Assembly (NCBI RefSeq): GCF_003704095.1
Contig: NW_020843751.1
Span: 248,001-301,525 of the forward strand
DNA from: Pocillopora damicornis
Lineage: Eukaryota
Direction of reading: 5' to 3'
Length of the DNA stretch: 53,525 bases
Shown here: one piece after another, positions 30,740 through 53,525 of the stretch
How the letters are laid out: every line of letters begins with the position of its first letter
How positions within the stretch are numbered: position 1 is the stretch's first letter
Made by a program: the position numbers and the translations under genes
The notes under the pieces: model-generated
The model's input: the letters and a program-made list of their open reading frames with translations, nothing else
The model's database searches: none
Told to the model about the DNA's origin: nothing

Positions 30740-30819
30740 TTTTAGCTAACGCGAATTCGAACAAGGTGCGTCTAACCTTCACTTCGTTGACTCCTCTCGT
30801 TTCACAGATTTTGGCATTT

Positions 30820-30940: not shown

Positions 30941-32747
30941 TGTGATCTTGAAATCGTTGTGGGTCGAAGAGCGGTGGTCGGGGGGAAATTGAAATGTGAT
31001 GTAAATATTGGGGATAAAGATGTTTTCGAAAGAGAACGTCAGAAAAAGCCATTTACACCCTTTTTTTTTCGGTGTTGACTTCAAGACTTCCTTTGACTTC
31101 AGAATAAATAATATGAATTTGTTTGACGTTATGACTTATTATGCTATAATTGATAAAAGGATTATTCTGCTCACGACCACGCAAAATTTTAACTCATCAT
31201 TACGTTTGATGGCCTTTAAAATTTTATTCGCTCGGAGCTTAAATAGGATGCACCCACACGTACAAAAGTTAACCAACACATTATTGTTGAAGAAAGTGGC
31301 TTTAAGAGTTATTTTGATCGTAATAAGAGCCGTCGAAGTCTGAAAATTGTGCCTTGAACATAATGTTAAACAGAGCAAGGAATTTACGGGTGAAGAGAAG
31401 CTTTCGTGAAAAAAGCTGTCTTATCAGGAACGTTCGAAACAAAGAATTGAGGAAAATCTTGATAACGCTATCGTGGCGAAAAATTCCACATAATACGTGA
31501 CTCTAGAAAAAAAAACTGCGTGAAATTTCTAAATATTAATAAGAAAAGCTTTCTTTTTTCCCTGTAGACTAAATAAACACGAACGTGTTTAGACGAACCC
31601 AGCAAATTTACATGTAAGCAATATTGTAGATCGTTCCAAGCGCGTCTCGAGTCGGTTGAAAAGAAAAAATTCGAGAACGAAAGATTTTCCCAGTTTCAGA
31701 GAAAATAGGATTTCCTCGACGAAAAGCTTCCTGGGGATTATTGTGTGGGCTCTAAGAGAGTATCCGTTTTTGATATGAAAGGAGATAAAACAAGAACTTG
31801 ATTGCACGGTTAAGCTGAATATAGTTTTCGTTATTACTGAAATTAACCACGTTCTGGATCTAAGAAAAAATTACTTGGAACAAAAAAGTTTCATCGATTT
31901 TCTACACCAAGTTTAATCTTCATTCTAATGTTTCAAGTCAGTTTTAAGTCAAATATTGCTGTCTTGATAAAGAAGGCTGCGTAATTTTCAACATAACATC
32001 GCAAAAAATTTTTATCCCGTGGGCTTTTTATTTAGAGGGAATAAACTTACCTATAAGCGGAACTCGATGTTATCAACAGCTATCAGCACCACAAAATTTA
32101 AGCATGTAACTAGCTGGGGATGATTTTTATTTCGAGGCTTGAGGTTATTTTGTATTAAATTGCATTCGCCTTTAATCAGCAAAAGTTCCTTCAAAAGGCC
32201 TCGCAACGAAAATAAGAACCTTGTTCCCGAGCTCCTCTACCTTCATATATTTCCGAGGAGGGAGAGAGAGGTGCCTGGGACCAAGTTTCCAACACTTGTA
32301 AACGTAAACGTAAGGCGTATTTCAAATCTCGTATTTCTCATCCAAAAAAGCTTAAGAATTTGTTAAAGAACTTCAATGCCTTAAATAGAAAACTGTACAT
32401 TTAACACCTGTTGTCTCATTTCGCAGCTTTTACGATACCGACTATGTAAAACGAATTGAAGAGTCATGTGCAATATCTTTCCTGTGAATGAGGCATATTT
32501 ACAATGACTGAACAAAAGCACTTTTACAAAACTTAGCAAAGGATGATACTCGTGGGATATTATATTACTCAAGGCTGAAAACTGTTNNNNNNNNNNNNNN
32601 NNNNNNNNNNNNNNNNNNNNNNNNNNNNNNNNNNNNNNNNNNNNNNNNNNNNNNNNNNNNNNNNNNNNNNNNNNNNNNNNNNNNNNATCATCTCTAATCT
32701 TGAACGAAGCTGATGTAAATTCTTTTCATATTTGCTTTCATATCAAG

Positions 32748-34115
32748 GTCCACTTGGAATGACAAGTAACAGAAGTATCGAAATCGTCCAAAAGTCGACA
32801 TCCTGTGAAAACCTCCACGCTATCGCACCAGGAACAATGGGAAAAGGTTCTGTTGGCTCACCGGAGAGTCGACTTGAAAAACTTGAAGGAGTTCCGGACG
32901 ATACCCGTGTTTTCAAGGGGGAACTGGAGGGAAATCTTCCCCCTGAAACGTTGTCAAGGCCACCACGACAGCTAAATCTTCGAGGAGGCGGGCAAATCTT
33001 TGTAAAAACATTGACTGGAAAGACGATCAGTTTGGAAGTGGAACCGTCAGACACCATTGAGAATGTGAAAACAAAAATTCAAGACAAAGAAGGAATTCCA
33101 CCGGAGCAGCAAGGTCTTATATTTGACGGGAAGCAATTGGATAATGGCCGTTATCTGAGTGACTACAATATTCAGAAAGAATCAATACTTCACTTGGTTT
33201 TAAGACTGCGTGGTGGCATGCAAATATTTATAAAAACATTGACTGGAAAGACGATCACTTTGGAAGTGGAGCCTTCAGATACGATAAAGAAGGTGAAACG
33301 GAAAATTCAGGACATAGAGGGTATCCCACCAAGCAAGCAACATCTGATCTTTCATGGGCAGCGATTGGAAGATGGCCGTTGTCTTAGTGACTACAATGTT
33401 CCGAAAGAAGCGACTCTTCACTTGGTTTTAAGACTGCGTTGTGGCATACAAATCTTTATAAAAACATTGACTGGAAAGACGATCACTTTGGAAGTGTACC
33501 CTTCAGATACGATAAAGAAGGTGAAACTGAAAATTCATAACAAAGAGGGTATCCCACCAAGCCAGCAACATCTGATCTTTAAGAGGCAAGAACTCAAAGA
33601 CCACCAAACGTTACATGAATACAAAGTCACAAACAAATCTTCGGTACATTTGCGACTCGAGGACGAACTTGATAGAATACTTATCAATGTGGAGTTTTCA
33701 ACTGGAAGGAAGATTTTAATAAATGTTTCACCAAAGGATGATCTTGAGAGCGTGAGAAAAATGATCTCTGATAGAGAAGGGATTCCAGTTGATCAACAAC
33801 GCCTCAGTTTTGCTGGCAAAGAAGTTGTAGACGACCACCTTCCTCTAAGTGAGTACCACAATGAGATTGAATTATCTTTGCAACTGGATGTGAAACAACA
33901 AAAAAATGAATTCCTTCTTCATGTGAAGACACCAACCGGAAAAACAAAGATCAAAGTTGAAGCTGTATCGGGAGATACCATCCACGATGTGAAAAGGAAA
34001 ATAATGGAAGAGATTGGAATACCGCCACATCAGCAACTACTTATGTTTAACAGTCAGGAAATTGAAGATGAGCGCCGCACGCTGGAAAGCTACGACATCA
34101 ACAGCGACTCCATCA
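32748..34115 (+). CDS. Degenerate poly-ubiquitin / multi-UBL ORF: ~80-aa leader ending LRGG, Ub1 32990-33217, Ub2 33218-33445, Ub3 33446-~33670, UBL4, UBL5; truncated by a gap
   Basis: Ub1 differs from ubiquitin at 10 of 76 positions and ends LRLRGG. Ub2 ends LRLRCG and Ub3 ends LRLEDE. UBL4 and UBL5 keep GIP..QQ.L.F. A pyrimidine tract plus AAG acceptor ends at 32747; first ATG at 32759. Confidence 0.9.
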
Positions 34116-34219
34116 NNNNNNNNNNNNNNNNNNNNNNNNNNNNNNNNNNNNNNNNNNNNNNNNNNNNNNNNNNNNNNNNNNNNNNNNNNNNNNNNNNNNN
34201 NNNNNNNNNNNNNNNATAC

Positions 34220-37200
34220 AGCTAATCCCTTATCACACCAAGTGATTGCTTGTTCAAATCTCTTCAGTTCAACACAGGCAAAGGCTCCTGCAGGAAACAA
34301 CACAATGGAGATATAATGACTATGGCTTAATTCCGAGAAAAGAACCAGAAATCATTGAAAGCTAACTTATTACAGACCAGGAAAGACAAAGCAACTAAAT
34401 GGAAAGAATAAACAGGCCCTATTAGGTTTCAGTTAGATTAGTTTTTGATAATTGAAACTTCTGAGGACATTTGAGTTGAGACTAACAATTCCCACAAAAT
34501 CACTAAGAGATATAGATATAACAAGACATGCCATGGGAAAACACAAAAAGGAAAATCACTTTTTTTTATTTGATAATGGTACATTTTTTGGTTAACTTTT
34601 TTAGAACTGGGTTTAATTTCAACTTCAATCAAAATACAAGAGACTCAAGCTACAGTTTAAAGTTCACCAACAATAAGATTTACTCATGCTGTCTCTAGTT
34701 ACATTCTTATTACATGTATTATAGCCTTTAAAGTTGAGTTATACTTGATGAATGAGGAAAGTTTCCTTACAGTTTTGAGTTCAGGTAAGTCCATTACTTC
34801 TTTTCAAAACAGCTAGATAGTGACTAAACATACCTGATACCACTACCTAACCCATCGAACAAAAGGAAACTAAAATACTCGTGCTGAAATTTTGCCTTTA
34901 ACTCAGCACTGGGATCTTTATCCAACTCAAAATAATATTCTCATTATAATGAAAAGTCATGGCACAGCAGTCTTGCACTCCTAATTGAAGTCGATTGAGA
35001 CAAGATTTAACTTTATTTAACCTTAAAGTGTTCAGTTCTTGTTGTTATTATTACTATTAAAAGCACAGCAATTATATCTAACCTCTCACAATTGCCTTGA
35101 GGTAAGTTGGATTTAACTCAATGGCTGCTTCTGCATCCCTAAGTGAATCCTGGTGATTTCCTGTTTTTTAAATACATATCTCTGATTAGCTGTAAATATA
35201 GCAAATCCACCACCCTTACATTAATTTTATGAAATCATGTGATGCTGATGTTATCTGGTGTAAGAGGTTACTTCTTTGTATGTTTGAGAGGCCAATAAAA
35301 AGCATATATTTTTCTAGAGAATTTCTTTCTGGGCATATACATTCATAATTATCACCTTTTTCAGAAAACTACTACGGACAGCCCTTTAAGTTTCAAAAGA
35401 GGAAAATTGCATATTTGTTAGCTCTCATCATCTTACCAAGTTTAAAATGTGCAATAGCCCTGTTGTTGTACAGTTTGGCCTCCAGTTCTTTCTCATTGCA
35501 GTTCACTTTAATTCCTCTGGTGTAAAAATGAATAGCATTGATGAAATCTCCTTTCTTGAAGGCCTCATTACCCTCATTCCTATAAACATCAGCTGTGGCT
35601 GCAAAGAAAAAAATTAAAATAATTTGTGTCAAAGTCTTTGGTTGTAGTTAATTAGTGTATAAGCATAAGCAGCAATTGTCTCCCTCCGTGCCCTAAAAGG
35701 AAAAAACCCACTCAGTTAATTTATGAGATACTCTTTTTGCTTGAAAGCTCAATCTATTAGACTCAGTTTCTGTTGTGGTCATCATTTAGAAGAAAGGGTT
35801 GTCCCTACTTTGAAATAATCTAAGCGCAATCAAGTAAATCAAGATAAGAGCCCTAAGATAACCATAATAACATTGGATATGGGGAATCTCCCTGCCAATG
35901 AGAGAGAGTCAGCATAATTACAAGTGTTAAAGAGTCTACTGCTTTAATTACATTTAGATAGTTAATGAGTCAATAAGATCCAAATGTTGCAATCATAAGA
36001 ACTAGAAGCAATATTTCTTATTGACAAACACAGTTATTATATAAATGATAAGAATAATGATGAAGAAGATGAGATTAATAGTTATGATGATGCTAATAAT
36101 GTGGGTGACAATACTAGTAATAATAATAATGATGAAAATCAAGTGTCCTCAATTTGAAGTAAACCCCTGGGCATTTAAACTTTTGTAGAATGGTTTCCTA
36201 AAATTCCTATCCCTTTGGGTAAAATATGTGTTCATATGCCCCACCCAATTTTTATGTAAAAAACAAAATAATTACAAATAGCAGCCATGACTTTCAACAA
36301 ATTGACCAAGCTTGAAAACCGAGAACTTGAAGACTTTTTCCTTCCAAGCCATTTCTTAGTGAAAGTGCACTAACCCCTAACACCTCCATATTAAATAATA
36401 TCACACTTGTATTTTACTGGAAATTAGTCTTGACACTTGTGGTTCAAATTCCCCAATGCCAGTCGAGCAAACTTCAATTGAGTGCTCTGCAGTCACATAA
36501 ATTACCCTTTTTGCAGAGATCTGCATTTTCTGCAAATTGATACATTTCTCAGCTGGCTATTCAAAGACATTTGTGTATTCTGTTAAACTATTGGCTTGAT
36601 AATATATCTACTTCTTTGGGCTGGCCAAGATAAAGGAGTTGATCAGTTTCCTTAAAATGATCATTAAATTTCTTGAATGATACCTGTCTAAATTTGGTGA
36701 AACAACAAATTTGTTAACATGTTGAGGGGGCATAAAAAAGACATAACTTGCAAACCTCTGCTAATGTGTTTTAAAGCATTGATGATTAGACGATGCCCTG
36801 TTTATTCAGTTAAAGACAGCTCTCCAAAACACTTTGTATGTGCTCACCTGAACCCTGCAGAAAAAAGTTTCGTGCAGCCTTGTACTCCTCCAGCTGAATA
36901 GTTGTTGTCAGTCTCAGCTCAGTCAAGTCAAACTCCTTCAGTATGTCCTTTGTCACAAGATATTTCTGTGCCATGTCATTCAGGTTACCTGTGCAATAGT
37001 CATACCACAGGGCATCCAGTATCTCTAGTGAAGTACACAGGACTGTTACTATCAAACTTCCTGACTGGGCATCCAGGACAAGAACCTTGCGCACATCTGT
37101 TAAATACTCTAGAAATTCAGTTCATTCCTCACGTTTGGTTGTGTCAACTGTCTGAAAGTACTTGTGTGCGATGAAATCCAGAACTCCTTGTGTGTTGGGT

Positions 37201-38774
37201 ACAACATAGGTTTTAACACCTGCTTCTTCGATGCTTTCTGTTCTTCCCACGAGTGGTAGACCAGCAGATGCAGCAAGCTCCACTGCCTTACGCTTAGCTC
37301 CAGTAACTACCATCTCAAGGCTTCCTGCCTGGGTATCTTGTGTGCCTTTAGGCATTCCTTCTGATGTTCCAGTAGCTACCAGCTCATCACCACAAGCTTG
37401 GGTACCCTGACTGGCTACAACCACTGTCCCTGGTGTCTCTAGTTGTGAAAGAGGGTTTGTGATGGCCTCACAATCAATCTGCATTCGAATTTTAACTGTA
37501 AGGGAAAAAAGTGTTATTAATTGCAGCAACTAGCCATTACAAAAGAGGCAAAACAGACAATTACTTTGAGTCATTGTCCAGCTACAAATAGTCAAATAAC
37601 AAATAACTGACAGTTCTCTGCTTCAAAAATGTACGAAGCCATTTCTGTCAAAATACATGTAACAGTGAGCACTGCACAGGTAACCCTGATACATTGTGTA
37701 AGTGCCTGTGTTAGAGGAAAAATACTTTACTTTAAAGAAAAAATAAACAAGCTGACCTCCAGCTGAGGAATTGGGTTGACCACCAAGTTCTAATCGATCT
37801 TTGATGTCTTGGGCTACATCTCGTAACTCTTGCCTCAAGCACTGTACTTCTTGGGCTGTAGATTCTACTTTCCCTCCAAGCTGATCTTTGATGTCTTGGG
37901 CTTCATCTCGAAGCTCTTGTCCTAAGTGCTGAACCTCTTGAACTGAAGATTCTACTTTCCCTCCAAGCTGATCTTTGATGTCTTGGGCTTCATCTCGAAG
38001 CTCTTGTCCTAGGTGCTGAACCTCTTGCGCTGTAGATTCTACTTTCCCTCCAAGCTCATCTTTAATTTCTTGGGCTTGTTCTCGAACTTCATGTTCTAAG
38101 TATTTCTCCAAATGCTTCACTGAAGATTCTACTTTTTCAAAGTATTCCTTTACTTCTGTATCATTCTGGTACCAGCATTGCAATTCCTGCTCATTTCTCT
38201 TGTCCTCCTCTGTGAGGGGATCTTTTAAAAATGTATCAATGGCATTTTGCCATTCTTTTGCCTTTGCTGGACTGATTTGACCTGCAATTCTCACCAGAGC
38301 CTCACTAATTTCTCCCCAAAGAACTGAAAACTTGTCATCTGAGATTTCCATGTTCTCCTTCACATGACCATATATCGAATTGCGGTAATATTTTATTCTG
38401 GCTAAATATGCTTCTAAACTGTCATCTGTACTTGCTGGTAGTGCATCCCAGCCTGTGACAGGAGCAGTGAGGCCACATATTGTCCTTAGCAACCGGAAAA
38501 GGAGAGTTATATCAAAGTCTGTTGACTTTCCATACATCCCAGGGGAAGGGTACAGGCAGTCCATCTGTGGTTTGGTGAGCTTTGCTGCCTTAAGTAGCTT
38601 CTTCATGGCTGGATTCTGAAGTATAGTAGGAAGATTACTTGATGGAGATTTGATGTCAAAAACCTCCCTCAATAGTACAGTACCTCCACTTATCAAAAGC
38701 CGAGCCAGACGTTGAAAATTATCTCTCCCTCTCGAAGAATGAAGCACCTCAGCAGGGTCCAGAGTGGCAGCCAT
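34220..38774 (-). CDS. HEPN (DZIP3-type) - coiled-coil repeats - TRADD-N-like - TPR protein, copy 1; exons 37757-38774, 36848-37495 (in-frame TGA at 37122-37124), 35437-35598, 35083-35160, 34220-34287; 3' end lost in a gap
   Basis: DFDITLLFRLLRTICGL..P..GWD.LP...D.S.EA.LARIKYYRNSIYGH is a DZIP3-like HEPN with an R-N-x4-H motif. GSLIVTVLCTSLEILDALWYDYCTGNL resembles TRADD-N-like domains. YRNEGNEAFKKGDFINAIHFYTRGI / LYNNRAIAHFKLGNHQDSLRDAEAAIELNPTYLKAIVRGA are co-chaperone-type TPRs. All four introns are GT-AG phase 1 and join in frame. May be a recent pseudogene. Confidence 0.75.
37797..38080 (-). repeat. 87-bp (29-aa) coding tandem repeat, about 3 units
   Basis: EAQDIKDQLGGKVES(S/T)(V/A)QEVQHLGQELRD is repeated with near-identical DNA. 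Confidence 0.9.
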
Positions 38775-39243: not shown

Positions 39244-39776
39244 TCCGACTGTTCTTGCAAAAAGTCTATAATCCTTTTACTTTACAATCTTTTCAGTTTA
39301 TGAATACATTATTCAGTTACAAGAGACTTGAAATACGTTTCCTCAAAGAAGGGAAACTAGGCGCGCTAGAATGTGTAGTACGTTGCGTGACACAAGAAAG
39401 AAATCACTTAGCAGTCACAACGTGCTTGCTAGCCACCTACGTCGTTTACTTCCTATGATTTACAGGAGTTGACACACAAATTTCATATCATCATTCTCTC
39501 CCGAGGTAACAATGTATGATGTATCAGTTATCAAAAACAAAGATGTTATCCATTCGCTGGAGCGGGGTAATGATAATAAACTAACGACACGCTTGCCGCT
39601 TTGATCATTCTCTGTGGAGGAATCAATTTATCAACTTCAACCTAAATTTTGACCGAACAGGAACCCAGCGAGGCTCNNNNNNNNNNNNNNNNNNNNNNNN
39701 NNNNNNNNNNNNNNNNNNNNNNNNNNNNNNNNNNNNNNNNNNNNNNNNNNNNNNNNNNNNNNNNNNNNNNNNNNNN

Positions 39777-40494
39777 TATCTTGGGCTTCTTCTCGAACCT
39801 TTTGTCTTACGTATTGAGCTTCTTTCTCCAAATGCTTCATTGAAGATTCTACCTTTTCCAGGTATTTCTTTACTTCTGTATCATTCTGGTACCAGCGCTG
39901 CAATTCCTGCTCATTTCTCTTTTCTTCCTCTGTGAGAGGATCTCTTAAAAATGTATCAATAGCATTCTGCCATTCCTTTGCCTTTGCAGGGCTGATTTGA
40001 CCCGCAACTCTCACCAGAGCCCCGCTGAGTTCTCTCCAAAGAACTGAAAACTCGTCATCTGAGATTTCCATGTTCTCGTTCACATGACCATATATCGAAT
40101 TGCGGTAATATTTGATTCTAGCTAAATCTGCTTCTAAACTGTCATCTGTACTTGTCGGTAGCGCATCCCAGCCCGTGACAGGAGGAGTAAGGCCGCATAT
40201 TGTCCTCAACAACCGGAAAAGGAGAGTTATATCAAAGTCTGTTGACTTTCCGTACATCCCTGGGGAAGGGTACAGGCAGTCCCTCTGAGGCTTTGTGAGC
40301 TTTGCTGCCTTAAGTAGCTTCTTCGTGGCTGGATTCTGAAGTGTTGTGGAAAGATTACTTGGTGGACATTTGATGTCAAATGCCTCCCTCAACAGTACAG
40401 TACCGCCACTTATCAAAAGCCGAGCTAGACGCTGATAATTATCTCTCCCTTTCGAAGAACGAAGCACCTCATCTGGGTCCAGAGCGGCAGCCAT
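39777..40494 (-). CDS. HEPN paralog copy 2, open frame running into a gap
   Basis: MAAALDPDEVLRSSKGRDNYQRLARLL...ADLARIKYYRNSIYGH; highly similar to copy 1, including about 900 bp of upstream sequence. Confidence 0.8.
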
Positions 40495-42764
40495 TTAGAA
40501 AGAAGGAAAAACTGAGGCGGGATCAGTTATCGGACCGTCCTTACCTCATGACTGCAACCCAAACTGTGAAATAGATCAACGGAGTAAACGGTAGATCTCA
40601 CAAAACACAGATATAGCTAATATAAAACGTACCCGCTTAAATAGGATGGATGGATGATTTAAGAGGAGAGGATCAAAACGGATTTTTTCAATAGTACTTA
40701 GACATTTTCATTCCACGTTATGTGGGTATGATTTTTCTGGCAAGGAATCAGTGTTCAACAACTTAGATGCGTTTTTCTTAGATTAAATGAGAAGAGAAAT
40801 TGTAAAAAAAATACCCTAAATACTCTGATCTTAACCCCTTTAGCAAAAGCGACATATATAGTGGGTCGAACGAGTAATTTGAAATCTCGGGACCTGCATC
40901 CTTATTTAAATCACATTTAAAGATTGTTCGCACAAAAAGTTTATTACCCTTCTACTTTTCAAGCTTTTCAGTTTATGACAACACCTAGGAAAACTAAATA
41001 CGCAAATGACTGTGAAGCCTAATTTCCATTTACTTTTTACATATTTTCTTTAACAAAAATAAATAGAAGTTTGGGAAGTTCAGCATTAATACGGCTATAT
41101 AGGTTCCCAGTTTAACCTGGTTGTCAAAAGAGTCTGTTTAAGGAGGTGAAAACATGATTCAATTACAAAAGACTTTAAAAAAATTTGCTCAAAGAAGGGA
41201 AACTAGGTGGGCTAGAATGTGTAGTACATTGCGTGACACAAGGAAGAAAACACTTAGCAGTCACAACGTGGTTGATAGTCACCCACTTCATTTACTCCTT
41301 ATGATTTACAGGAGTAGATACACAAATTTCATATCATCATTCTCTCCTGAGGTGATGCCTTACTTATCAAAACAAAGAGTATCATCTATTCGCTGGAGCG
41401 GGGTAATGATAATGAAATAACGACACGCCGGCGGCTCTGATCATTCTCTGAGGGGGAATTAATTGATCGACTTCAACCTAAATTTTAACCGAATAGGAAC
41501 CAAAGGAGCGAGGCTCAAAATACCAGTAATATTCTTATTGAGCTGGTTTGCTAGTCAGTCATCCTTCAAGTATCGCAAACGACATTTCATAGAGATTCGA
41601 AACTAATGAAAATCTCTCAGATTTGCATTTGGAAGCTGGTTCATACACGCCACTCACTTAAATTACGCTCATTGGACAGATTTCTCAATCACAAAAGCAA
41701 TCACTTCAACAGATCTTCAGCAAACCTTAAAATTAAGAGTTGGGAGATTAGCTCATGCAGAGAAAATGTCAAACAGGCTTCTTACCTTAAGAGTTTTTTC
41801 CTTCGATTTACATCAAACTACGGTCTGTGATTCTTTAGCGTTGGCAGATATGCAAATTTCCTCTCTCAACCGTGAAAAGCGGAAGTCAATGGGTTCGCAG
41901 CGTATCATAGAGGGGGGGAGGAGGTATTACAAGATGATCAACTGAGTTGATAATATACATCGCCACCATAGAATATAGAAAGCGAAATACTTCAGTAGTA
42001 CATTTGTTTTCACGCGATTTAGCGATTCTTTTTATATTTACGTGTTTTTAAGATCTCTAGCTATCTAGCTATCAGATATGTCGTAAATGTCTTTTTGTAA
42101 TACAAAAAAAAACATTTTTTAAAAAGCCTCAATCATTTATATCGCAACGGTCTGTAATATCTCCTTGAGTCTTATAGTCCGTGATCATTTTCTCCTGGAT
42201 GTTTGTCGGCGATGTTACTCCATGCATTTACTTCTGGAATATCGTCGTCTACATTGCCTCCTGAGATGTCCCTCTATGCAGTAAATCTCTTTATAAACTC
42301 TCCTGCGCCTGCTATGATTGTATCAGGGTTATCTCCAGCAGTTAGCACCTTGGGATCATTCCCATCTTTCTTAATCTGATCGGGAAATGCTTTTATTGGA
42401 ATGTTACCTTAGTCAATGTAATATCCTTGAATATTTTTCTCTGGTCTTTTCACTCTTACAGTTCATTCTTCTGGAAAGGCGTCCCTTAGCCTCTTATCCT
42501 GCGAGAAATAGTCCTCTAAACTGTCATTCTTTGAACCTACATTCCTTACGTCTCTATTAGAATGTTCTGAACAGTTGTCTTCTACAATGATCTCTTCCGA
42601 AATATCCTTCTCTGAGCTGAGTTCCTCTGAATGGTAATCTCTCGATTGGTGACCTCTGAACTCACTTATTTATTACGCCCACACACACGTGCATAAACAG
42701 AAACAAACAACTATAATTCAGTTGGAATATATGAAAGGTGGCGTTATACCATCTAAGGCGATTG

Positions 42765-42905
42765 GTAAGCAAACTGAACCTTTCGCTAGCGTTTCTGGCG
42801 CGATATTCTGGAGCTTTTCACAGGTTGTCGATTCTTGGCCGATTCCCATACTTCTGCTTCTTTTCATGCCAAGTGGAACATGATCTGAAAGGAAATATGA
42901 AAAAA
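42765..42905 (-). pseudogene. Paralog of the 5' leader exon of the poly-UBL ORF, without the ubiquitin units
   Basis: Minus strand ttttcatatttcctttcag|ATCATGTTCCACTTGGCATGAAAAGAAGCAGAAGTATGG...ACCTGTGAAAAGCTCCAG..ATCGCGCCAG...AAAGGTTCAGTTTGCTTACC aligns with 32723-32862 (+). Confidence 0.75.
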
Positions 42906-43504
42906 ATTAAATTATATCGACCTAATTCAAGATTAGCGCTGTAATCTATTCCTACGTCTTAACCCAAATAAATGAACTGAGTGGTTCATCACAGTAAGTC
43001 TTATCAATCTCAGTTACATTCCTTTCTTTCTAAAGTGTTTTTTATTTGTTTTAGTTACTCCTTGTACGAACTTATCCATCAGTATGAGGGTAATGTAACC
43101 CAATTAAGAGGAAACAAAAATATCCTTCTCTCTCGGGTCTACAAAATATATTTCTCAGACGGATCACCATATATATATATATCTCTGCTGGTTACTGAAA
43201 GAAATTATTTTTTAATTTAAAATCACATCGAGACCATATAGGTTTGTCAATACTCTTTATCTGTCGACCTGTCAGTATATTTACTAGAGCCACCATTAGA
43301 TGAAGGAATTCGATCAGTTGCCTAGAACTGTGGCCCCCAGGCCCCCTCCAACTGCCTCAATCACCATCCCTCGACCAAATTAAGACAGCACATTCACAAG
43401 TATCAGCTCTGAACACTAAATTTCCTAAATAGTACCCATCTGAATCTGGTAAAACAACAAATTTAAATAATTTATTTAACTCCTCTGGTTTAGTTGGGTC
43501 AACG

Positions 43505-44051
43505 GCCTTAAATGTAAACCATCTGAGTGGTAGAAAGAAGTGAAAGAGCTTAGTGGGTGCTCAGTTGCCTCCACGGCGCGAAGTGACACTTTGAAATCGC
43601 TACAACATCTGCATGAGGGTATTGACCAAATCAGCCTGGCTAACATCATCAATGAGGCTTTCTTATCGCCAATGCACTGCTTCACACCGCTTCCTGCTGC
43701 TTTTTTGTGCACTACTTTCAGTAACTACTTCGAAAACTCCCTTGTTGTGTCGGTTGAGTCAGTCCGCAAAAAACTATCAAAGTTGAACCCGTGCAAAGCC
43801 AACGGTTCAGACGACATCCCAGGATGGTTGTTAAAGGAACACGCAGACATTTTAGCTGGTCCGGTATCTAACATCTTGAACTCCTCGTCCCATGAAGGAC
43901 GCTTGCCATCGTCATGGAAGCACGCATATGTAGTCCCTGTGCTAAAGCAAAAGCCTGTCCGTGAAGTAAACAAGCACTTACGCCCTATTTCACTAACCCC
44001 CATTTTGCCAAAGATGTCTGAAGCTTATGTGGTTGACACTTATGTCAAACC
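43505..44051 (+). mobile_element. Non-LTR retrotransposon reverse-transcriptase fragment
   Basis: KLNPCKANGSDDIPGWLLKEHADILAGPV..ILNSS...GRLPSSWKHAYVVPVLK...HLRPISLTPILPKMSE is a LINE RT N-terminal region. Confidence 0.9.
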
Positions 44052-44151
44052 NNNNNNNNNNNNNNNNNNNNNNNNNNNNNNNNNNNNNNNNNNNNNNNNN
44101 NNNNNNNNNNNNNNNNNNNNNNNNNNNNNNNNNNNNNNNNNNNNNNNNNNN

Positions 44152-44875
44152 GATCAATTTAGTCAAAGGCTTTGCGAAAGTCAAACAGTACGGCTCTCAT
44201 AGTAGCCCCATTTCCGTCAGTCGATTCCAACCAGGAGTGCAACATGCTGATAAGCGCACGCGTAGTAGAAGATTTAAGTACGAACCCAAATTGTTGAGGA
44301 TCAATCCTCTCCAGCACAGCAGGTTTGACGTAGGTGTCAACCACATAAGCTTCAGATATCTTTGACAATATGGGGGTTAGTGAAATAGGGCGTAAGTGTT
44401 TATTTACTTCACGGATGGGCTTTTGCTTCGGCACGGGGGCTACATAAGCGTGCTTCCATGACGATGGCATGCGTCCTTCACGGTACGAGTAGTTCAAGAT
44501 GTCAGATACCGGACCAGCTAAAATGTCTGCGTGTTCCTTTCACAACCATCCTGGGATGTTGTCTGGACCGTTGGCTTTGCACGGGTTCAACTTTGATAGT
44601 TTCTTGCGGACTGACTCAGCCGACACAACAAGGGAGTTTTCTGAAAGTAGTGCTCGGAAAAGCAGCAGGGAGCGGTGTGAAGCAGTGCATTGGCAATAAG
44701 AAAGCCTCATTGATGATGTTAGCTAGGCAAATTTGGTCAGTATCTTCATGCAGATGTTGTAGCGATTTCAAAGTGTCACTTTGCGCCGTGGAGGCAAGCG
44801 AACGCCCACTAAGCTTTTTCACTTCTTTCCACCACTCAGATGGTTTACATTTCTTCAGGTGTTCCACCTTGGCTT
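44152..44875 (-). mobile_element. Second copy of the same LINE RT region, frameshifted
   Basis: PSSWKHAYVAPVPKQKP...LRPISLTPILSKISE...QQFGF...STTRAL...VLFDFRKAFD; strongly similar to 43505-44051 in inverse orientation. Confidence 0.9.
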
Positions 44876-45391: not shown

Positions 45392-46329
45392 TTCTCAGCT
45401 AAGAGCTCGCACGGATTAACAATTAAACCCGAAAATTCATATGCAGCTACAAAGAACACGACGTTGTTAGAAACGAACAGGGTTTTTTTCTCTTCGGGTG
45501 TTTTTCACAGACAAGTTTTTGGCCGATTCTTTCTGAATGGTGTATTCTATCAAATAGCGGCCATATTCAGAGTTGCTTGCCGGTAAATATTAGTCTTCCA
45601 GCTATGAATTAGTATACATGGAAATTATGACACCGACAGCGTTTTGAGAGGCGGCGTCAATAGTCGATTTTTGGCAATTTTGGAGACCATTTTCAAATGA
45701 ACAAGTTACACTCGGGAGTCAAAAGAGGAGAGTGGTAAATGTTTATGGACACTTTTTAATTCCGGTTATAAAAATAAAGTTTCCTACAGCTATGCAGTTT
45801 TCTCCTGGTCCCTAGAATGAGGACAAATAATACTTACATAACAACTCATTAGGAATATCGAATGGCGGGAGTCATGACGCCAGAGGCGTAAGAGCATGTT
45901 CAGTCGTTTTTCGTCAGCACGAACACAGCAGCAAAATGAGTGCACATGCATTGAGCGTCTAGGCTATGATTCTTCTGCAAACATAGGCTGATGCGTAGCC
46001 ATGTTACGGCTGCTCAACTTCAGCCATTAAATGCGCACCTGTAACCACAATACGTTTTTGTTGAGAGAGATATGTGACGAAGGAGGGTCGACAGAAACTT
46101 TCCTGGAGAAGGCAACCCTTTTCTGTTTTGGTTTGGGCTTATCCCCACGAAATAAGAACAAACAATAGAAATTTTAAAAAGGCCGCCATTTTACCTCGGT
46201 AGTGTTACTATGGAAGTATTGTCGTTCCCATTCCTTTGCACGCGTAACTTTCTCGCGAGTTACAAGCATGCGCCTTCGTTTTGCCGCTGTATCGTCAGCA
46301 CAAACATATTTAAGTGTGCTGCATCGGTT

Positions 46330-47728
46330 CCAACACCTGCTTCTTCGACGCTTTCTGTTCTTCCCGCGAGTGGTAGACCAGCAGATGCAACAGGTTCCAC
46401 TGCCTCGCGCGTACCACTAGTAACTACCATCTCATGGCTTCCTCCCTGGGTATCTTGTGTGTCTTGAGGCGTTCTTCCTGATGTTCCAGTAATTACCAGC
46501 TCGTCGCCACAAGCTTGGGTACCCTGACCGGTTATAACCACTGTCTCTGATGTCTCAAGTCGCGAATGAGGGTTTGGGTTAGTCGCACAACAAATCTGCA
46601 CTCGAATTTTAACTGTAAGGAGAAAAAGTATCATTATTTGCAGCGACTAGCCACTTACAACAAAGGCAAAGCAGGCTATTAACATGAGTGGTCGTCCGGC
46701 TAAAGTCAAGTAACTATATATTAACTAATTGAAATTTTTTTTATGCTTCAAAAATATACCAGGCCATTTCTGTCAAAATAAGGGCACAATGTGCACCGTA
46801 CAGGTAACCCTGATACGTTGCGTAAGTGTCTATGTTAGAGGAAAATACCTTACTAATAACAGATATACAGAATAAATCAACAAGCTGACCTCCAGCTGAG
46901 GAATTGGGTCGGCCATCTATGTCTAATCGATCTTTGATGTCTTTGACGTCTTGCCTTAAGTGCTGCACTTGTTGGGCTGCAGATTCTACTTTCCCTCCAA
47001 GCTCATCTTTAATATCTTGGGCTTTTTCTTGAACCTCTTGTCTTAAGGATCGAGCTTCTTTCTACAAATGCTTCATTGAAGATTCAACCTTTTCAAGGTA
47101 TTTCTTTACTTCTGTATCATTCTGGTACCAGCGCTGCAATTCCTGCTCGTGCCTCTTGTCTTCCTCTGTAAGGGGATCTTTTAAAAATTTATCAATAGCA
47201 GTCTTCCATTCTTTTGACTTCGCAGGGCTGATTTGACCCGCAATTCTCACCAGGCCTCGCTGATTTCTCTCCAAAGACGTGACAACTCATTACCTGCTAA
47301 TTCCATGTTCTCGTTCACATGGCCATGTATCGAATTGCGGTAATACTTAATTCTCGCTAAATCAGCTCCAAAGCTGTGGTCTGTATTTAAAGGAAAACAA
47401 TCCCAGCCCATGACAGGAGGGGTGAGGCCGCATATTGTCCTCAACAACCGGAAAAGGAGAGTTATATCAAAGTCTGTTGACTTTCCATACGTCCCTGCAG
47501 AAGGGTATAGGCAGTCCCACTGTGGTTTGGTGAGCTTTGCTGCCTTAAGGAGCTTTTCTGTGGCTGGATTCTGAAGTGTTGCGGGTAGATTACTTGTGGA
47601 CATTTAACGTCAAAAACCTCCCTCAATAGCACAGTACCTCCACTTATTAAAAGCCGAGCCAAACGTTGAAAATTATCTCTCCCTTTCGAAGAACGAAACA
47701 CCTCATCTGGGTCCGGAGCGGCTGCCAT
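46330..47728 (-). pseudogene. HEPN paralog copy 3 (exon 46890-47728 plus truncated exon 2, 46330-46612)
   Basis: Same sequence family (RIKYYRNSIHGH) with 1-nt frameshifts near 47597 and 47255 and a TAG at 47062-47064. Exon 2 homology (VKIRVQI...QGTQACGDELV) stops before the TRADD-N-like part. Confidence 0.88.
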
Positions 47729-49850: not shown

Positions 49851-50309
49851 TACACGCGTATAGGCGCATTCCACCCGCCCCATATAGGAAACAATAGGCT
49901 AAAAATATATATATGCATTAACGATTTTACAATGATTGTACAGAATGACGTGTTCTGATTGGTCAATGATGGTTCATATCTTGCCATAATCGCTCCGGGC
50001 TGGGTGATTATAATTGCTTTCATCTTAACTTTACAAACGGCCGAAGCACTGCCATGTTTTGCGTGGAGATGTTGCCCCCTCAGTGGTACAGATTTTCAAC
50101 GCGATAAGCGGTGGAGAAGATTTTGAAACTGACCTTCAACAGACAGACCGAATGAGGCGCTACGACTTCTAATCTCTTTCAGTACCGCTCCCAGTCAACT
50201 TAAATCGCTCCAACTGCACTCCTGAGGTCTTCCATGTTTTCATTGATTGCCTGAATCGCTGGCGTCTTCCCTTCAGCCACACTTCGTGGCTCCTCTAATA
50301 TATGAACAG

Positions 50310-50912
50310 TGATTTCTTGTAGGTCTTCCACGGATTTATTTACTTTTGCATCCTGTTTATACCAGTCGAACAGTTCCTGTACCTATCCTTCGTCCTCTGA
50401 TGTGAGGAGATCGTCCAGGAACTTACCAATAACTGCCTGCCAGTCATGCCTCTTTGAAGGGTGGATTTTGCCTGCAGTTGTTACAAGAGCTTCGCTGATT
50501 TCAAGCCACAAAAATAAGAACTGGAAGTCATCTGCTATCTATATATCAGACTTTACATGATCATACACTGCTTCCAAACTGTGATCTGTATTCAACGGTT
50601 GAGTATCCCACCCTGTGACGGGAGGGATGAGGCTGCAAATCGTCCTCAGAAATCAGAAGGGGAGAGTGACATCAAAATCTTTTGATTTGCCGTACACCCC
50701 TGGGAAGGAGTCTAAACAGTCCCGCTGTGGTTTTGCTGCTTTGAGCCGCTTTTTTATAGCTTGATTTTTCAATATTGTTGGAAGAGAAACTGATGGACAC
50801 CTAATGTCAAAAGTTCGGCTCCACCACTTATTAACAGTCAAGAAACACGGTGGAAATTATCTCTACTACTCGTCAAACGGGGTATTTCATTTGGTTTTGG
50901 AGCAACCGCCAT
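50310..50912 (-). pseudogene. HEPN paralog copy 4, strongly decayed
   Basis: MAVAPKPNEIPRLTSSRDNFHRVS*LLISGG...PGVYGKSKDFDVTL...RTICSLIPPVTGWD...TDHSLEAVYDHVKSDI*; several stops and frameshifts, and the catalytic segment is deleted. Confidence 0.8.
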
Positions 50913-51202
50913 TTTAAAAGAACGAGTGAATAACCGTCAGTTTCACAGACGATGATTCAAATTTCAGTGAGATTTCTGCATCGAAAGAGACGTTGAATTC
51001 GTAAGCACTGTCTCTGAGCAAACTAGGCAATGGTTAAACCTGTGAACGGAATCTTGGTCCATACACACAAAGTCCTCTCAAGGAGAATATTGACTGGGTA
51101 GTAAAGGAAAGGGCGTGGTACTATATACATTGACCATGTTTGTTTCATCACTGAATACGTGACAGCATAAGATCATCCATAGTATTTAATTAACTGCCTT
51201 AG

Positions 51203-51382
51203 TACCCTTACACCCCAACATCAGTAGGCATATTCTCCATACTGTTTTCTGTACATTTCCTAAGGTGTTAATGAGGTGAATTTTTTTCCTTTATTCTCGT
51301 GACCTTCATCACGATGTGTTTGAGGGGTGATACAGCAAGGAGAAATTAGATGCTTGTCACTTTTAGGGAAAGAAAAGGTTAA
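51203..51382. mobile_element. MITE copy (TTAA/CCCTTT superfamily)
   Basis: acccttacaccccaacatcagta.gcatattctccatactg...ggagaaattagatgcttgtcacttttaggg...aaggttaa; reverse orientation relative to 3192-3389. Confidence 0.6.
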
Positions 51383-51995
51383 CACGAACTGCATCGTTAC
51401 TTCTGTATACACTTGGAAAGGTTGGACACTGAGGGTTCGTCTAATTGCTATTAATAATTCGCATGTAGTAGTAAGGATAGAGATTTTCCAATGACCCTCT
51501 CCCCGTGCAATGCAACGCTCAGATGAAGCAGTTACAAGGTTCTTAACGTATCACAGAAGGGAAATAATGTTACTTTTTTTCAATTTCCTGAAAATTATTA
51601 TTTTATTCCTGCTAAATAAACACAAAGATCTAAAATTTTCCAAAATTTTTATTTTGGTATCTTTTTCACTTTTGGAGATATAAAGCAAAACGTGATTTGA
51701 GAGCAGAAGAGAAGGCGCAAGGTTTATGACACTTCACGTCAACTTCTTCTCGTCACCTAGTTAACAAATACAAAACCACTAATGATTTACGATCGCGCTA
51801 TGCAACGATATTTCATAATTTTGTAAAAACGACGCATTTTGTGATAAAGGTAGCGGCATTTTGTAAGGGCTTACACAATTTGTAAAAGGTACTGCAGCGT
51901 TTAGTAACCAAGGCGACCTACTCGTTTTCTTAATAAGGACTGTAGCAATTTTGTAATAATCGTTGGTCAACGCAATTTGGCACAGATATATTGAC

Positions 51996-52365
51996 ACATG
52001 GAACAGTTTACCGTCATCGGTAGTTGAACTTAACTTAATGAATAGTTTTAAGAAGGCTCTAAAATCAACATTATTTAACTTGGCCTATAAGTACAAAATT
52101 AAATTATTCTATATATTGTACATCATTTAATTATTCATCGTTTCAAAAGAATTTTTATCTTAGATATGTCTTCTTTACTTAGATTTTATACTTATATAAA
52201 TATATGCTTGTATGTAAAATGTTGCAGTGTGTGTATATATATATTGCATAGTATTAAATATTTACATTTGGGGTATAGTTTACAATGAGGATTAAGTTCC
52301 TCCCTTCTATAATCCTTTTTTAATAATAATATATTCTATATGTTATGATTTAAATAAAGATGTTA
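51996..52365 (+). mobile_element. 3' end of a 5'-truncated LINE (CR1/L2-like ORF2 tail plus AT-rich 3' UTR)
   Basis: TWNSLPSSVVELNLMNSFKKALKSTLF matches the typical ORF2 C-terminal WN.LP...FK..LK motif; AATAAA near 52352. Confidence 0.55.
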
Positions 52366-52724
52366 TAAAAAAAGTTGTTGTAATCTCAACTTTACCACAA
52401 AATCTGTTCAAAAGTAATACAACGATTATCGTTCGATGGAGCATTTTTTTCTTCCGAGATTTCGACTAGATCTCGGCGATATCTCCGAAGAAATGCCGGG
52501 AACCAATGGGGTCCATTTTTCTAAGATCAACAAATTTTTCATGTTCATTGTAACTTTTTTCTTCTTCTTATATGTACAGTTGTGGTGACGGTTTCTTGAA
52601 GTGGGGATGGCATTTGTCCTTAGCATTTGAAAGGTGAAACCTCCCCTCCCCCACTGAAAAAAAAAATCACGAATACAAACCTTGATCAACAATAAGCATA
52701 AATACATTAATTACAGTTTCATTT

Positions 52725-53525
52725 TTACTCATAATTTGAAATTAGTCTCAAGTTGGTGTCCTCGGAGATCTTTCTGGATAAGCTTTCAAGAGCAATTTGC
52801 ATTGGTGTGGCTAAAGCACAAAGTTTATATGAATCTCGATGCTCGCCAAAGATAATGCCAAAAGCTTCAAGATTTCTATCTTCATCTCTTTCAAAGAGTA
52901 CTGCTCCAGAATCTCCTTTAGTTGCAAACACTTTTGCATAACCAAGACCAAATGGATGATCTATACATAAGCAGTTCTTTAACCAAAGACGTTTACATAG
53001 AGTGGCTGTGTCTTTTTTACAAGAGTCACAAGCAGCAGCAGTAGACTCCAATTGCTCTCCAATTCCAGATTTTTTCTTACAACTTTGACAGAGTCTGACA
53101 CGTTTCAACACACTGACCAAACCCTCATTTTGGGCATTCACTTCATATAAGGAAGCACTGAGAAACATTGATGGTTGCACATGACGACCAGACTTAGTGA
53201 ATCCTGTGGTTCGGCCACTCTTGCACAGTTCTCCACTGGCTTTTAGTCTTGAACTGCATTCCCCACTTAGGTGATCTCCTGTTCCAATCATTTCAGCTGT
53301 TTGACTCTGTCTTAAACTATCAACTTCTTCTGGAGTCAACTCAGCCAGGGCAGCATCAACATAGTATTGTTGACCATCATTCCAAGTCACATTACCAGAA
53401 ATGCCAACAGAGTATTTTGCTATGACCCTGGGTGGTGTCAAACCTTTCTCAAAAGCTCTTTCATGCAGCTCTAAAGCTTCTAATTTCCTCTTTGTCACCT
53501 TTGCATGGTGTTGGTGGTTTTCTTT
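52725..53525 (-). CDS. C-terminal part of a trypsin-fold serine protease (Nal1-like) with a Cys4 insertion; frame is open to the window edge
   Basis: YVDAALAEL (candidate catalytic Asp), LCKSGRTTGFT, FATKGDSGAVLF (catalytic Ser), FGIIFG, LATPMQIALESL. CQSC...CDSC lies between these motifs. The catalytic His would be outside the window. Confidence 0.72.
   Translation of the reverse strand, partial: KENHQHHAKVTKRKLEALELHERAFEKGLTPPRVIAKYSVGISGNVTWNDGQQYYVDAALAELTPEEVDSLRQSQTAEMIGTGDHLSGECSSRLKASGELCKSGRTTGFTKSGRHVQPSMFLSASLYEVNAQNEGLVSVLKRVRLCQSCKKKSGIGEQLESTAAACDSCKKDTATLCKRLWLKNCLCIDHPFGLGYAKVFATKGDSGAVLFERDEDRNLEAFGIIFGEHRDSYKLCALATPMQIALESLSRKISEDTNLRLISNYE

What the first reader, a model, noticed from the sequence alone, without database searches (positions are those of the whole stretch)
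32687..53525. Candidate innate-immune/conflict locus: HEPN RNase-TRADD-N-TPR array, degenerate poly-ubiquitin and a trypsin-like protease
Seen: within 21 kb lie five HEPN paralogs, a TRADD-N-like exon, TPR exons, a five-unit Ub/UBL ORF and a GDSG serine protease, with heavy duplication and decay, directly beside conserved housekeeping genes. Known: HEPN R-x4-6-H RNases, TRADD-N adaptors, TPR sensors, UBLs and trypsin-like peptidases recur as parts of prokaryotic defence and animal death/immune systems, and DZIP3-type HEPN domains are expanded in invertebrate NLR-like proteins. Inference: these genes may form a sensor (TPR) - adaptor (TRADD-N) - effector (RNase) module regulated by ubiquitin-type processing or proteolysis. 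I do not recognise this combination as described.
Basis: partly seen in the sequence, partly recalled or inferred. Interest (0 to 1): 0.8.

Follow-up and report, generated by a model that had tools for sequence, protein, structure and literature searches.

The report
Coral HEPN–TRADD-N genes with swappable tails
The "locus" is a tandem array of one known kind of coral immune-type gene: an RNase-like head plus a TRADD-N adaptor, spliced to a poly-ubiquitin, TPR or protease tail. The poly-ubiquitin piece looks like a separate gene only because its small contig is flipped in this draft assembly.

Summary
The domains are mostly real. There are four HEPN_DZIP3 copies rather than five, one TRADD-N-like exon, three TPR exons, five ubiquitin units and a trypsin-like protease. 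They are not separate cooperating genes.

Gap-free Pocillopora scaffolds show HEPN → coiled coil → TRADD-N → poly-ubiquitin on one strand, repeated in tandem. RNA contigs from two studies join the TRADD-N exon in frame to the poly-ubiquitin exon across opposite strands. The 1.4-kb poly-ubiquitin contig, which lies between two gaps, is therefore most likely inverted in this assembly.

Other RNA contigs join the same head to the TPR exons. These exons lie in a 2.3-kb inserted segment of a TPR–CHAT gene family. In related scaffolds the protease ORF is a NAL1-like serine peptidase and forms the tail exon of a further head; that unit runs off this scaffold's end.

No unit is intact as assembled: A has an in-frame TGA, B is cut by a gap, and C and D are decayed.

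This architecture, including the poly-ubiquitin, TPR and macro-PARP tails, is already catalogued for corals in Kaur et al. 2021 (eLife). It is a new member of a known kind. The protease tail and the alternative tail splicing are the modest additions. Function remains inferred.

The parts
37757..38774 (-). Unit A, exon 1: start codon, DZIP3-type HEPN domain (R-x5-H kept) and apolipoprotein-like helical repeats (coiled coil). Phase-1 donor.
   Evidence: Pfam HEPN_DZIP3 7e-41. RNA joint 37757->37495 with GT..AG ends in 3 of 4 runs.
36848..37495 (-). Unit A, exon 2: acidic/Thr-rich linker, an in-frame TGA at 37124-37122, then a TRADD-N-like domain (37121-36849). Two phase-1 donors lie 6 nt apart (exon ends at 36854 or 36848).
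   Evidence: The tool refuses the translation because of 1 stop. L006 has TTA (Leu) at the stop position.
34216..35598 (-). Three phase-1 TPR exons (35598-35437, 35160-35083, 34287-34216, the last running into a gap). They lie inside a 2.3-kb segment (36477-34216) that belongs to a multi-copy TPR–CHAT (TTC28-like) family and is absent from the gap-free relative L006.
   Evidence: Pfam TPR_1 7e-10. RNA joints 36848->35598, 35436->35159 and 35082->34286. 77-82% DNA identity, introns included, to L009 and L011. L010 shows the same three exons followed by a 1149-aa TPR+CHAT exon.
32748..34115 (+). Poly-ubiquitin tail exon of unit A, on a 1429-bp contig that is inverted in this assembly. Phase-1 acceptor, 78-aa leader ending LNLRGG, Ub unit 1 (ends LRGG), unit 2 (ends LRCG), then three divergent UBLs without GG. 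The 3' end (rest of UBL5, UBL6 and the stop) is missing in the gap.
   Evidence: Pfam ubiquitin 1e-103, 5 stretches. L006 has it co-oriented with HEPN and CSRNP. RNA joint on opposite strands, 32750<->36852, in X3 and X12. Full-length relatives are 546-621 aa.
39777..40494 (-). Unit B: HEPN exon, open, 85% aa identity to A, cut at about codon 238 by the gap at 39677-39776. No linker or TRADD-N exon is assembled.
46326..47728 (-). Unit C: HEPN exon split over three reading frames (breaks near 47597 and 47255), plus a linker remnant (46643-46326). No TRADD-N exon.
42764..42936 (-). Relic of the poly-ubiquitin leader on the minus strand (77% DNA identity to 32694-32862), downstream of unit C. It shows that the tail belonged to the duplicated unit and faced the same way as the heads.
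50299..50912 (-). Unit D: old, decayed HEPN copy (about 50% aa identity, several stops and frameshifts).
52728..53525 (-). C-terminal 266 aa of a NAL1-like trypsin-fold serine peptidase (Asp motif VDAALAEL, CxxC..CxxC insert, GDSGAV). The His motif, the N-terminal domain and the presumed HEPN–TRADD-N head lie beyond the scaffold end.
   Evidence: Relatives P0057 (421 aa, 93% identity) and P0069 (593 aa). H/D/S are near-invariant in 30 relatives. AF2 model pLDDT 85.5. Foldseek hit to rice NAL1, E 5e-14. Head→protease units on one strand in L012 and L026.
43510..44852 (.). Two inverted reverse-transcriptase fragments (90% identical) flanking the gap at 44052-44151: a retroelement insertion inside decayed unit C.
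   Evidence: RVT_1 E 8e-5.

Best explanation
The region is a tandem, partly decayed array of paralogs of one gene type. Each unit encodes a single polypeptide with a constant head and a variable tail.

The head has three parts: a DZIP3-type HEPN domain, a helical-repeat coiled coil and a TRADD-N domain of the DEDD2-like clade. The head ends in a phase-1 splice donor. The tail is carried on exons with phase-1 acceptors. Three tails occur here:
(i) a leader plus a linear poly-ubiquitin/UBL chain
(ii) three co-chaperone-type TPR motifs, captured from a TPR–CHAT family segment
(iii) a NAL1-like serine peptidase, for the unit that runs off the scaffold.

Shown here:
- the domain identities
- the head→poly-ubiquitin and head→TPR splice joints in RNA
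- the inversion of the poly-ubiquitin contig relative to gap-free relatives
- the recurrence of head→tail units in other Pocillopora scaffolds
- coding constraint on the sequences (dN/dS of 0.2-0.6).

Inferred, following Kaur et al. 2021:
- the HEPN domain is the RNase effector
- the coiled coil and TRADD-N mediate assembly or switching
- the tail senses, or connects to, an invader or a signalling partner.

For the poly-ubiquitin tail, only unit 1 keeps LRGG followed by Met. I therefore infer that deubiquitinases could cut there at most once. That would leave a head carrying one ubiquitin with a free GG end, plus an uncuttable four- to five-unit linear UBL chain. Alternatively, the intact tail could act as a built-in linear-ubiquitin-like platform, comparable to the tandem UBLs of OASL.
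For: - Pfam: HEPN_DZIP3 at 1e-40 and 1e-41, ubiquitin x5, TPR. TRADD-like_N in 13 of 15 exon-family members.
- L006, a gap-free scaffold whose flank is 98.5% identical to window 24367-32586, has HEPN → linker/TRADD-N → poly-ubiquitin → CSRNP on one strand. The window's poly-ubiquitin contig aligns in the opposite sense.
- L007 has three such units in tandem, and L008 has a diverged one.
- Donor and acceptor phases match: G|GT donor with ..caag|GT acceptor, giving codon G+GT.
- RNA contigs join 36852<->32750 on opposite strands in 2 runs from 2 studies (sides of 58 and 123 nt). They join 36848->35598 with GT..AG ends in 3 runs.
- The ATG of the poly-ubiquitin ORF is replaced by Ile in relative P0002.
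- The protease tail follows a head on the same strand in L012 (twice) and in L026, with a phase-1 acceptor.
- dN/dS: HEPN 0.17-0.6, TRADD-N 0.3-0.5, tail about 0.5.
- Literature catalogue of the same architectures: PMC8195603.
Against: - As assembled, no unit in the window is intact. A carries an in-frame TGA (37124-37122), B is cut by a gap, and C and D are broken.
- The RNA came from other colonies, so expression of this exact allele is not shown.
- The head→TPR joints rest on short contig sides (25-28 nt).
- The TPR exons run into a gap, so it is unknown whether TPR and poly-ubiquitin ever occur in one transcript.
- The window's own TRADD-N exon is below Pfam's cut-off.
- No RNase, cleavage or binding activity has been measured for any family member.
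Confidence: 0.78

Rival explanations
1. One reading: separate neighbouring genes (HEPN RNases, a TRADD-N/TPR protein, a poly-ubiquitin gene, a protease gene) cooperate as a multi-gene sensor–adaptor–effector module regulated by ubiquitin processing or proteolysis.
For: As assembled, the poly-ubiquitin ORF is on the opposite strand and has its own ATG. The protease ORF stands alone at the scaffold end.
Against: RNA joints fuse the TRADD-N exon to the poly-ubiquitin exon and to the TPR exons. Gap-free scaffolds put head and tail on one strand, 0.6 kb apart, with matching splice phases. The ATG is not conserved.
Confidence: 0.07
2. In this individual or haplotype the array is a gene graveyard. 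All four units are pseudogenes or assembly debris, and any function lies in other copies or haplotypes.
For: - In-frame TGA in unit A.
- Frame breaks in C and decay of D.
- Retroelement fragments in unit C.
- Four gaps.
- The genome holds at least 90 HEPN_DZIP3 matches, so loss of single copies is cheap.
Against: - RNA contigs match the window's poly-ubiquitin exon with 1 difference in 280 nt (record 1).
- The HEPN exons of A and B and the 456-codon tail exon are open.
- dN/dS is below 1.
- The TGA could be a single-base assembly error or a segregating allele.
Confidence: 0.25
3. The poly-ubiquitin ORF is an ordinary ubiquitin-supply gene (UBB/UBC type) that lies beside the HEPN genes by chance.
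For: Units 1-2 are 79-88% identical to ubiquitin.
Against: - A 78-aa conserved non-ubiquitin leader with a phase-1 acceptor.
- Only one unit ends in GG, and three to four units are strongly diverged.
- dN/dS is about 0.5.
- The leader occurs only at this locus in the genome.
- The exon is spliced to the head.
Confidence: 0.02

Closest known systems
Cnidarian HEPN + coiled-coil + TRADD-N (DEDD2 clade) + UBI(n) proteins catalogued by Kaur, Iyer, Burroughs & Aravind, eLife 2021 (e.g. Stylophora pistillata XP_022800602.1 and XP_022800615.1; Orbicella XP_020617640.1)
   Same: Same domain order, and the same family of corals for Stylophora (Pocilloporidae, from my own knowledge). The published model is the same: constant head, variable tail, lineage-specific expansion.
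   Different: The published entries are predicted proteins from other species. Here the poly-ubiquitin tail is hidden by an inverted contig. Splicing is supported by RNA. The tail has six units (five of them assembled in the window), graded from ubiquitin-like to divergent.
[quoted passage not shown]
   Same: The TPR-tailed form matches what unit A's contig encodes. The PARP14-like form matches the paralog seen at G000:C1462.
   Different: I could not fetch these accessions, so identity of RMX40274.1 with unit A is only a guess.
OASL (oligoadenylate-synthetase-like protein with two C-terminal ubiquitin-like domains) and ISG15 (my own knowledge)
   Same: An RNA-directed or nucleic-acid-related immune domain fused to tandem, non-cleaved ubiquitin-like domains. 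This suggests a built-in poly-ubiquitin mimic.
   Different: The head is unrelated (OAS fold against HEPN). OASL has two UBLs rather than six, no TRADD-N domain and no cleavable first unit.
Human DZIP3/hRUL138
   Same: Same HEPN subfamily (PF18738).
   Different: DZIP3 carries a RING E3 ligase domain, and has neither a TRADD-N domain nor a ubiquitin tail.
Rice NARROW LEAF 1 (NAL1) serine protease (PDB 7y77, 8has, 8pml)
   Same: Best structural match of the protease tail (Foldseek E 5e-14). Trypsin fold with an H/D/S triad and large inserts.
   Different: About 14% sequence identity. The coral family has a CxxC..CxxC insert and a roughly 260-aa N-terminal domain, and it follows a HEPN–TRADD-N head.
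TTC28-like TPR–CHAT proteins expanded in cnidarians
   Same: Unit A's three TPR exons are 79-93% identical to the first three exons of such genes. L010 shows these exons followed by TPR_12 repeats and a CHAT domain.
   Different: No CHAT exon is assembled in the window. The segment looks like a captured 5' fragment.

Membership tests
HEPN_DZIP3 (PF18738) | Profile match above the curated cut-off | tested here: met
   A 139 bits, B 142 bits, C 117 bits against a cut-off of 27. D scores 44.5 bits in the six-frame search.
HEPN_DZIP3 (PF18738) | R-x4-6-H catalytic motif | tested here: met
   R131..H137 (RNSIYGH) is invariant in A, B, C, L006, L005 and L012.
HEPN_DZIP3 (PF18738) | RNase activity | not testable with these tools
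   Needs a biochemical assay.
TRADD-like_N (PF20694) | Profile match above the curated cut-off for the window's own exon | tested here: not met
   16.3 bits against 23.7, E 0.009, covering 38 of 69 profile positions.
TRADD-like_N (PF20694) | Homology to sequences that do pass the profile | tested here: met
   A 59%-identical paralog (L005) scores 30.9 bits over profile positions 2-68. 13 of 15 members of the exon family hit PF20694, best 1.8e-13.
TRADD-like_N (PF20694) | TRADD-N fold | not tested
   The profile search against PDB sequences found nothing.
Ubiquitin family (PF00240), poly-ubiquitin type | Head-to-tail ubiquitin units | tested here: met
   Five stretches, 339 bits. Alignment to poly-ubiquitin-C.
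Ubiquitin family (PF00240), poly-ubiquitin type | Every unit ends in RGG so that monomers can be released | tested here: not met
   Only unit 1 ends LRGG. Unit 2 ends LRCG, and the later units have no GG.
HEPN–coiled-coil–TRADD-N–variable-tail expansion (Kaur et al. 2021) | Head and tail in one polypeptide | tested here: met
   In-frame RNA joints from head to poly-ubiquitin and from head to TPR. Matching phase-1 sites.
HEPN–coiled-coil–TRADD-N–variable-tail expansion (Kaur et al. 2021) | Lineage-specific expansion with differing tails | tested here: met
   At least 90 HEPN hits and about 20 TRADD-N-like exons in the genome. Tails seen: poly-ubiquitin, TPR, protease and PARP14-like.
PA-clan (trypsin-fold) serine peptidase, NAL1-like | His-Asp-Ser triad in that order | tested here: met
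   H257, D384 and S533 are invariant or nearly so in 30 relatives. The window holds the Asp and Ser motifs only; the His lies off the scaffold.
PA-clan (trypsin-fold) serine peptidase, NAL1-like | Fold | tested here: met
   Model of relative P0069 has pLDDT 85.5. Foldseek hits NAL1 at E 5e-14 and S. griseus protease B at E 3e-8.
PA-clan (trypsin-fold) serine peptidase, NAL1-like | Pfam profile above cut-off (Trypsin_2, Nal1_C, Peptidase_S64) | tested here: not met
   Only sub-threshold hits: Nal1_C E 0.03, Trypsin_2 E 0.004 in 1 of 30 members.
TPR–CHAT (TTC28-like) | CHAT peptidase domain after the TPRs | tested here: not met
   Present in paralog L010 (PF12770, 3e-58). Not assembled in the window, where the TPR exons end in a gap.

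The most novel reading that the evidence does not exclude
The poly-ubiquitin tail may be a genetically encoded linear-ubiquitin bait or platform on an RNase. Two conserved LRGG sites flank one near-canonical ubiquitin: one ends the leader and one ends unit 1. Downstream of them lies an uncleavable UBL chain. Cutting at these sites by an invader's LxGG-specific protease or deubiquitinase, or by host enzymes on stimulation, would separate the HEPN–TRADD-N head from its tail and switch the RNase. This would be a 'tripwire' comparable to protease-sensing NLRP1/CARD8. In addition, one head can be spliced to alternative tails (TPR or poly-ubiquitin), which would give combinatorial receptor–effector diversity from a single locus.
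Probability: 0.12. Interest if true: 0.8.

Novelty: new member of a known kind. Interest (0 to 1): 0.38.

Why it matters
It corrects a draft-assembly artefact that hides a fusion gene. It adds RNA-level support for a domain architecture so far known only from predicted proteins. It also adds a NAL1-like peptidase tail and alternative tail splicing to the repertoire of coral HEPN–TRADD-N proteins.

These genes are candidates for antiviral or cell-death effectors in reef corals, but none has been tested experimentally. The graded poly-ubiquitin tail offers a concrete, assayable hypothesis: cleavage at one site, then binding of linear-ubiquitin readers.

Tried and rejected
- AF2 on P0057 with a 13-sequence alignment gave pLDDT 32 and was unusable. 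The deeper alignment A4 was needed.
- Pfam found nothing above cut-off for the protease ORF.
- A profile of the protease family hit the synaptobrevin SNARE motif in the PDB (E 0.018). I reject this as chance. The aligned stretch is the CxxC..CxxC insert that is conserved family-wide, and Pfam Synaptobrevin did not match.
- A TRADD-N profile against PDB sequences gave no hit.
- The claimed fifth HEPN copy at 45394-45107 showed no significant similarity.
- A search for further copies of the poly-ubiquitin leader in the genome found only the two in this window.
- Paralogs at C2969 and C1462 carry no TPR or ubiquitin tail.
- No gap was filled.


Full report
SETTING

The window is the last 53.5 kb of scaffold C386 of a 234-Mb assembly in 4,393 contigs. 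Coral metagenome scaffolds from Tara are 98.5% identical to its housekeeping flank.

From the assembly statistics (my own knowledge), and because Kaur et al. list GCA_003704095.1 proteins with these architectures, I infer that this is Pocillopora damicornis. This is an inference, not a tool result.

GAPS

The window has nine runs of N. The poly-ubiquitin ORF lies on a 1,429-bp contig (32687-34115) bounded by gaps on both sides.

- In the gap-free scaffold L006, positions 13438-21638 align to window 32586→24367 on the minus strand at 98.5%. L006 9929-11354 aligns to window 32687→34115 on the plus strand at 93.9%.
- In L006 the HEPN exon, the linker/TRADD-N exon, the poly-ubiquitin ORF and the CSRNP gene all lie on one strand.
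- The small contig is therefore inverted relative to its neighbours.
- About 2.1 kb of L006 (11355-13437) has no counterpart in the window. This stretch includes the end of the tail ORF.
- The gap at 39677-39776 cuts HEPN copy B. On its other side lies the upstream region of copy A.
- The gap at 44052-44151 lies between two inverted, 90%-identical reverse-transcriptase fragments.
- I filled no gap.

WHAT IS PRESENT

Pfam confirms HEPN_DZIP3 in three ORFs (1e-40, 1e-41, 8e-34), five ubiquitin units (1e-103) and a TPR exon. tblastn and the own-genome search give four HEPN loci, A to D. The claimed fifth is not significant. The R-x5-H motif is invariant.

The TRADD-N-like exon scores below Pfam's cut-off on its own. 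It nevertheless belongs to an exon family of about 20 copies in this genome. Thirteen of 15 tested members match PF20694, best 1.8e-13.

As assembled, unit A carries an in-frame TGA at 37124-37122, where L006 has TTA. C is split over three frames, and D is decayed.

ONE GENE, NOT SEVERAL

The TRADD-N exon ends in two phase-1 donors 6 nt apart (CAG G|GT TCA G|GT GAG). The poly-ubiquitin ORF is preceded by a pyrimidine tract and an AG, giving a phase-1 acceptor (..tcaag|GT CCA). A spliced reading therefore continues in frame.

The three TPR exons are also phase 1-1. So is the protease exon in L012.

RNA contigs from four runs were laid on 32687-38686, with these joints:
- HEPN exon→linker exon (37757→37495, GT..AG) in three runs.
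- TRADD-N exon→poly-ubiquitin exon, reported as a joint on opposite strands (36852<->32750, 3 ambiguous letters). It appears in two runs from two studies, with 58 and 123 nt on the shorter side.
- TRADD-N exon→first TPR exon (36848→35598, GT..AG) in three runs, with shorter sides of 25-28 nt.
- The two TPR–TPR introns.

Most contigs covering the first TPR exon carry a different upstream exon (loose end at 35600). That exon matches the TPR–CHAT paralogs. The head→TPR form is therefore a minor product within a large family.

One contig runs from the TRADD-N exon into the intron (36521-36974). This is compatible with a head-only isoform or with unspliced RNA.

RECURRENCE

- L007 carries three tandem units of HEPN → about 216 aa (linker and TRADD-N) → poly-ubiquitin.
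- L008 carries a more diverged unit.
- The window keeps a relic of the poly-ubiquitin leader on the minus strand at 42936-42764, downstream of unit C.
- The leader occurs nowhere else in the genome.
- The ATG of the ORF is Ile in relative P0002.

THE TPR SEGMENT

Homology between L006 and unit A stops at window 36477. From there to the gap at 34216, the window is 77-82% identical, introns included, to other loci of the genome (L009, L011). A more distant paralog (L010) shows the same three small TPR exons followed by a 1,149-aa exon with TPR_12 repeats and a CHAT domain.

The TPR exons are therefore a captured 5' fragment of a TTC28-like TPR–CHAT gene. It sits in the intron between the head and the poly-ubiquitin exon of unit A. 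A chimeric contig cannot be excluded, but the RNA joints argue that the junction exists in nature.

THE PROTEASE

The ORF at 53525-52728 has no Pfam match. The evidence for its identity is as follows:
- Relatives extend it to 421-593 aa.
- In 30 diverse relatives, His (LSCxHV), Asp (FVDAAIA) and Ser (GDSGA) are invariant or nearly so. Four Cys of a CxxC..CxxC insert are also conserved.
- A model of P0069 reached pLDDT 85.5.
- The model matches rice NAL1 at Foldseek E 5e-14. It also matches bacterial S1 proteases with TM-scores of 0.65-0.77, normalised by target length.

In L012 (two copies) and L026, this ORF follows HEPN exons and a TRADD-N exon on the same strand. It is thus a further tail, and its head lies beyond the scaffold end. 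In another coral (L013) a relative lies between zf-CCCH/WWE and PARP ORFs.

CONSTRAINT

Pairwise Nei–Gojobori dN/dS is mostly 0.17-0.4 for the HEPN domain (up to 0.6 between the closest copies), 0.3-0.5 for TRADD-N and about 0.5 for the tail. The tail ORF stays open over 450-620 codons in five copies. These are coding sequences under relaxed or mixed selection, unlike true ubiquitin.

THE TAIL ITSELF

Read from the alignment, unit 1 differs from ubiquitin at 9 of 75 positions. It keeps all seven lysines and ends LRGG followed by Met. Unit 2 differs at 16 of 76 positions and ends LRCG. Units 3-5, and unit 6 in relatives, are divergent UBLs without GG. The leader ends LNLRGG in all relatives inspected.

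LITERATURE

Kaur, Iyer, Burroughs and Aravind (eLife 2021, PMC8195603) make two relevant statements. [quoted passage not shown] Second, this clade shows fusions to TTC28-like TPR and to polyubiquitin.

Their Fig. 4-source data 1 lists the following:
- HEPN+Coiled-coil+TRADDN-DEDD2+UBIx8 (Stylophora)
- +UBI+UBI (Orbicella)
- +TPRs and +RRM..Macro+Macro+PARP (P. damicornis)

No trypsin-like tail appears under HEPN heads in the parts I read. Noel et al. 2023 (PMC10236652) note many N-terminal DZIP3-like HEPN domains in coral immune receptors.

VERDICT

The combination is already described at the level of predicted architectures.

New here:
- the assembly inversion
- RNA support for the fusion
- alternative TPR and poly-ubiquitin tails on one head
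- the NAL1-like peptidase tail.

Mechanism is inferred: an RNase effector, a TRADD-N/coiled-coil assembly module and a variable sensing or coupling tail. My confidence in the specific poly-ubiquitin mechanisms is low. Earlier notes of this scan on the same stretch proposed the flipped contig and the phase-1 modules, and I tested and confirmed both.

Noticed in passing
window 37122-37124 (minus strand): In-frame TGA between the linker and the TRADD-N-like part of unit A. The gap-free relative L006 has TTA (Leu) at this position. It could be a nonsense allele or a base error. RNA letters at this site were not among those listed.
   Followed up: partly
window 43510-44852: Two 90%-identical reverse-transcriptase fragments in inverted orientation around the gap at 44052-44151, inside decayed unit C.
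   Followed up: partly
window about 52950-53130; alignments A2 and A4: The Cys-rich insert of the protease (CxxC..CxxC, then W..NC) gave a weak profile hit to the synaptobrevin SNARE motif (E 0.018). Family-wide conservation of the four Cys points to a zinc-ribbon-like insert instead. No function is known.
   Followed up: partly
L013 (ENA ctg25820_51x_l, 425076-445885): In another coral assembly, a 66%-identical protease ORF lies between zf-CCCH/WWE ORFs and a PARP catalytic ORF on the same strand. This may be a PARP12-like protein with a NAL1-like peptidase module.
   Followed up: no
L002+L005 (G000:C1462:525000-539500): A paralogous head (HEPN exon, then a Ser/Thr/Glu-rich repeat plus TRADD-N exon that passes Pfam) lies upstream of RRM-like, macro and PARP ORFs on the same strand. 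This matches the published HEPN–TRADD-N–PARP14-like protein RMX48053.1.
   Followed up: partly
G000, whole genome: At least 90 six-frame HEPN_DZIP3 matches, often in tandem or inverted clusters (C1045, C4043, C2182, C612, C3384). About 12 close copies (79-93% aa) of the first TPR exon, many on tiny contigs, which suggests recent and poorly assembled duplications.
   Followed up: no
L012 5387-7533 and L026 3662-5808: The protease-tailed units carry two HEPN exons in a row. The second ORF starts with a linker-like stretch fused to a HEPN domain, so the head itself is internally duplicated.
   Followed up: no
window 36521-36974: An RNA contig (X7, depth about 30) runs from the TRADD-N exon through both donors into the intron. 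Read through, the frame stops 12 codons on. That would give a head-only protein like the published 515-535-aa HEPN+CC+TRADD-N entries, or the contig is unspliced RNA.
   Followed up: no
window 30143-30739 (minus strand): CSRNP_N-domain ORF (Pfam 4e-52) immediately downstream of the array. The same neighbour appears in L006, which anchors the synteny.
   Followed up: yes
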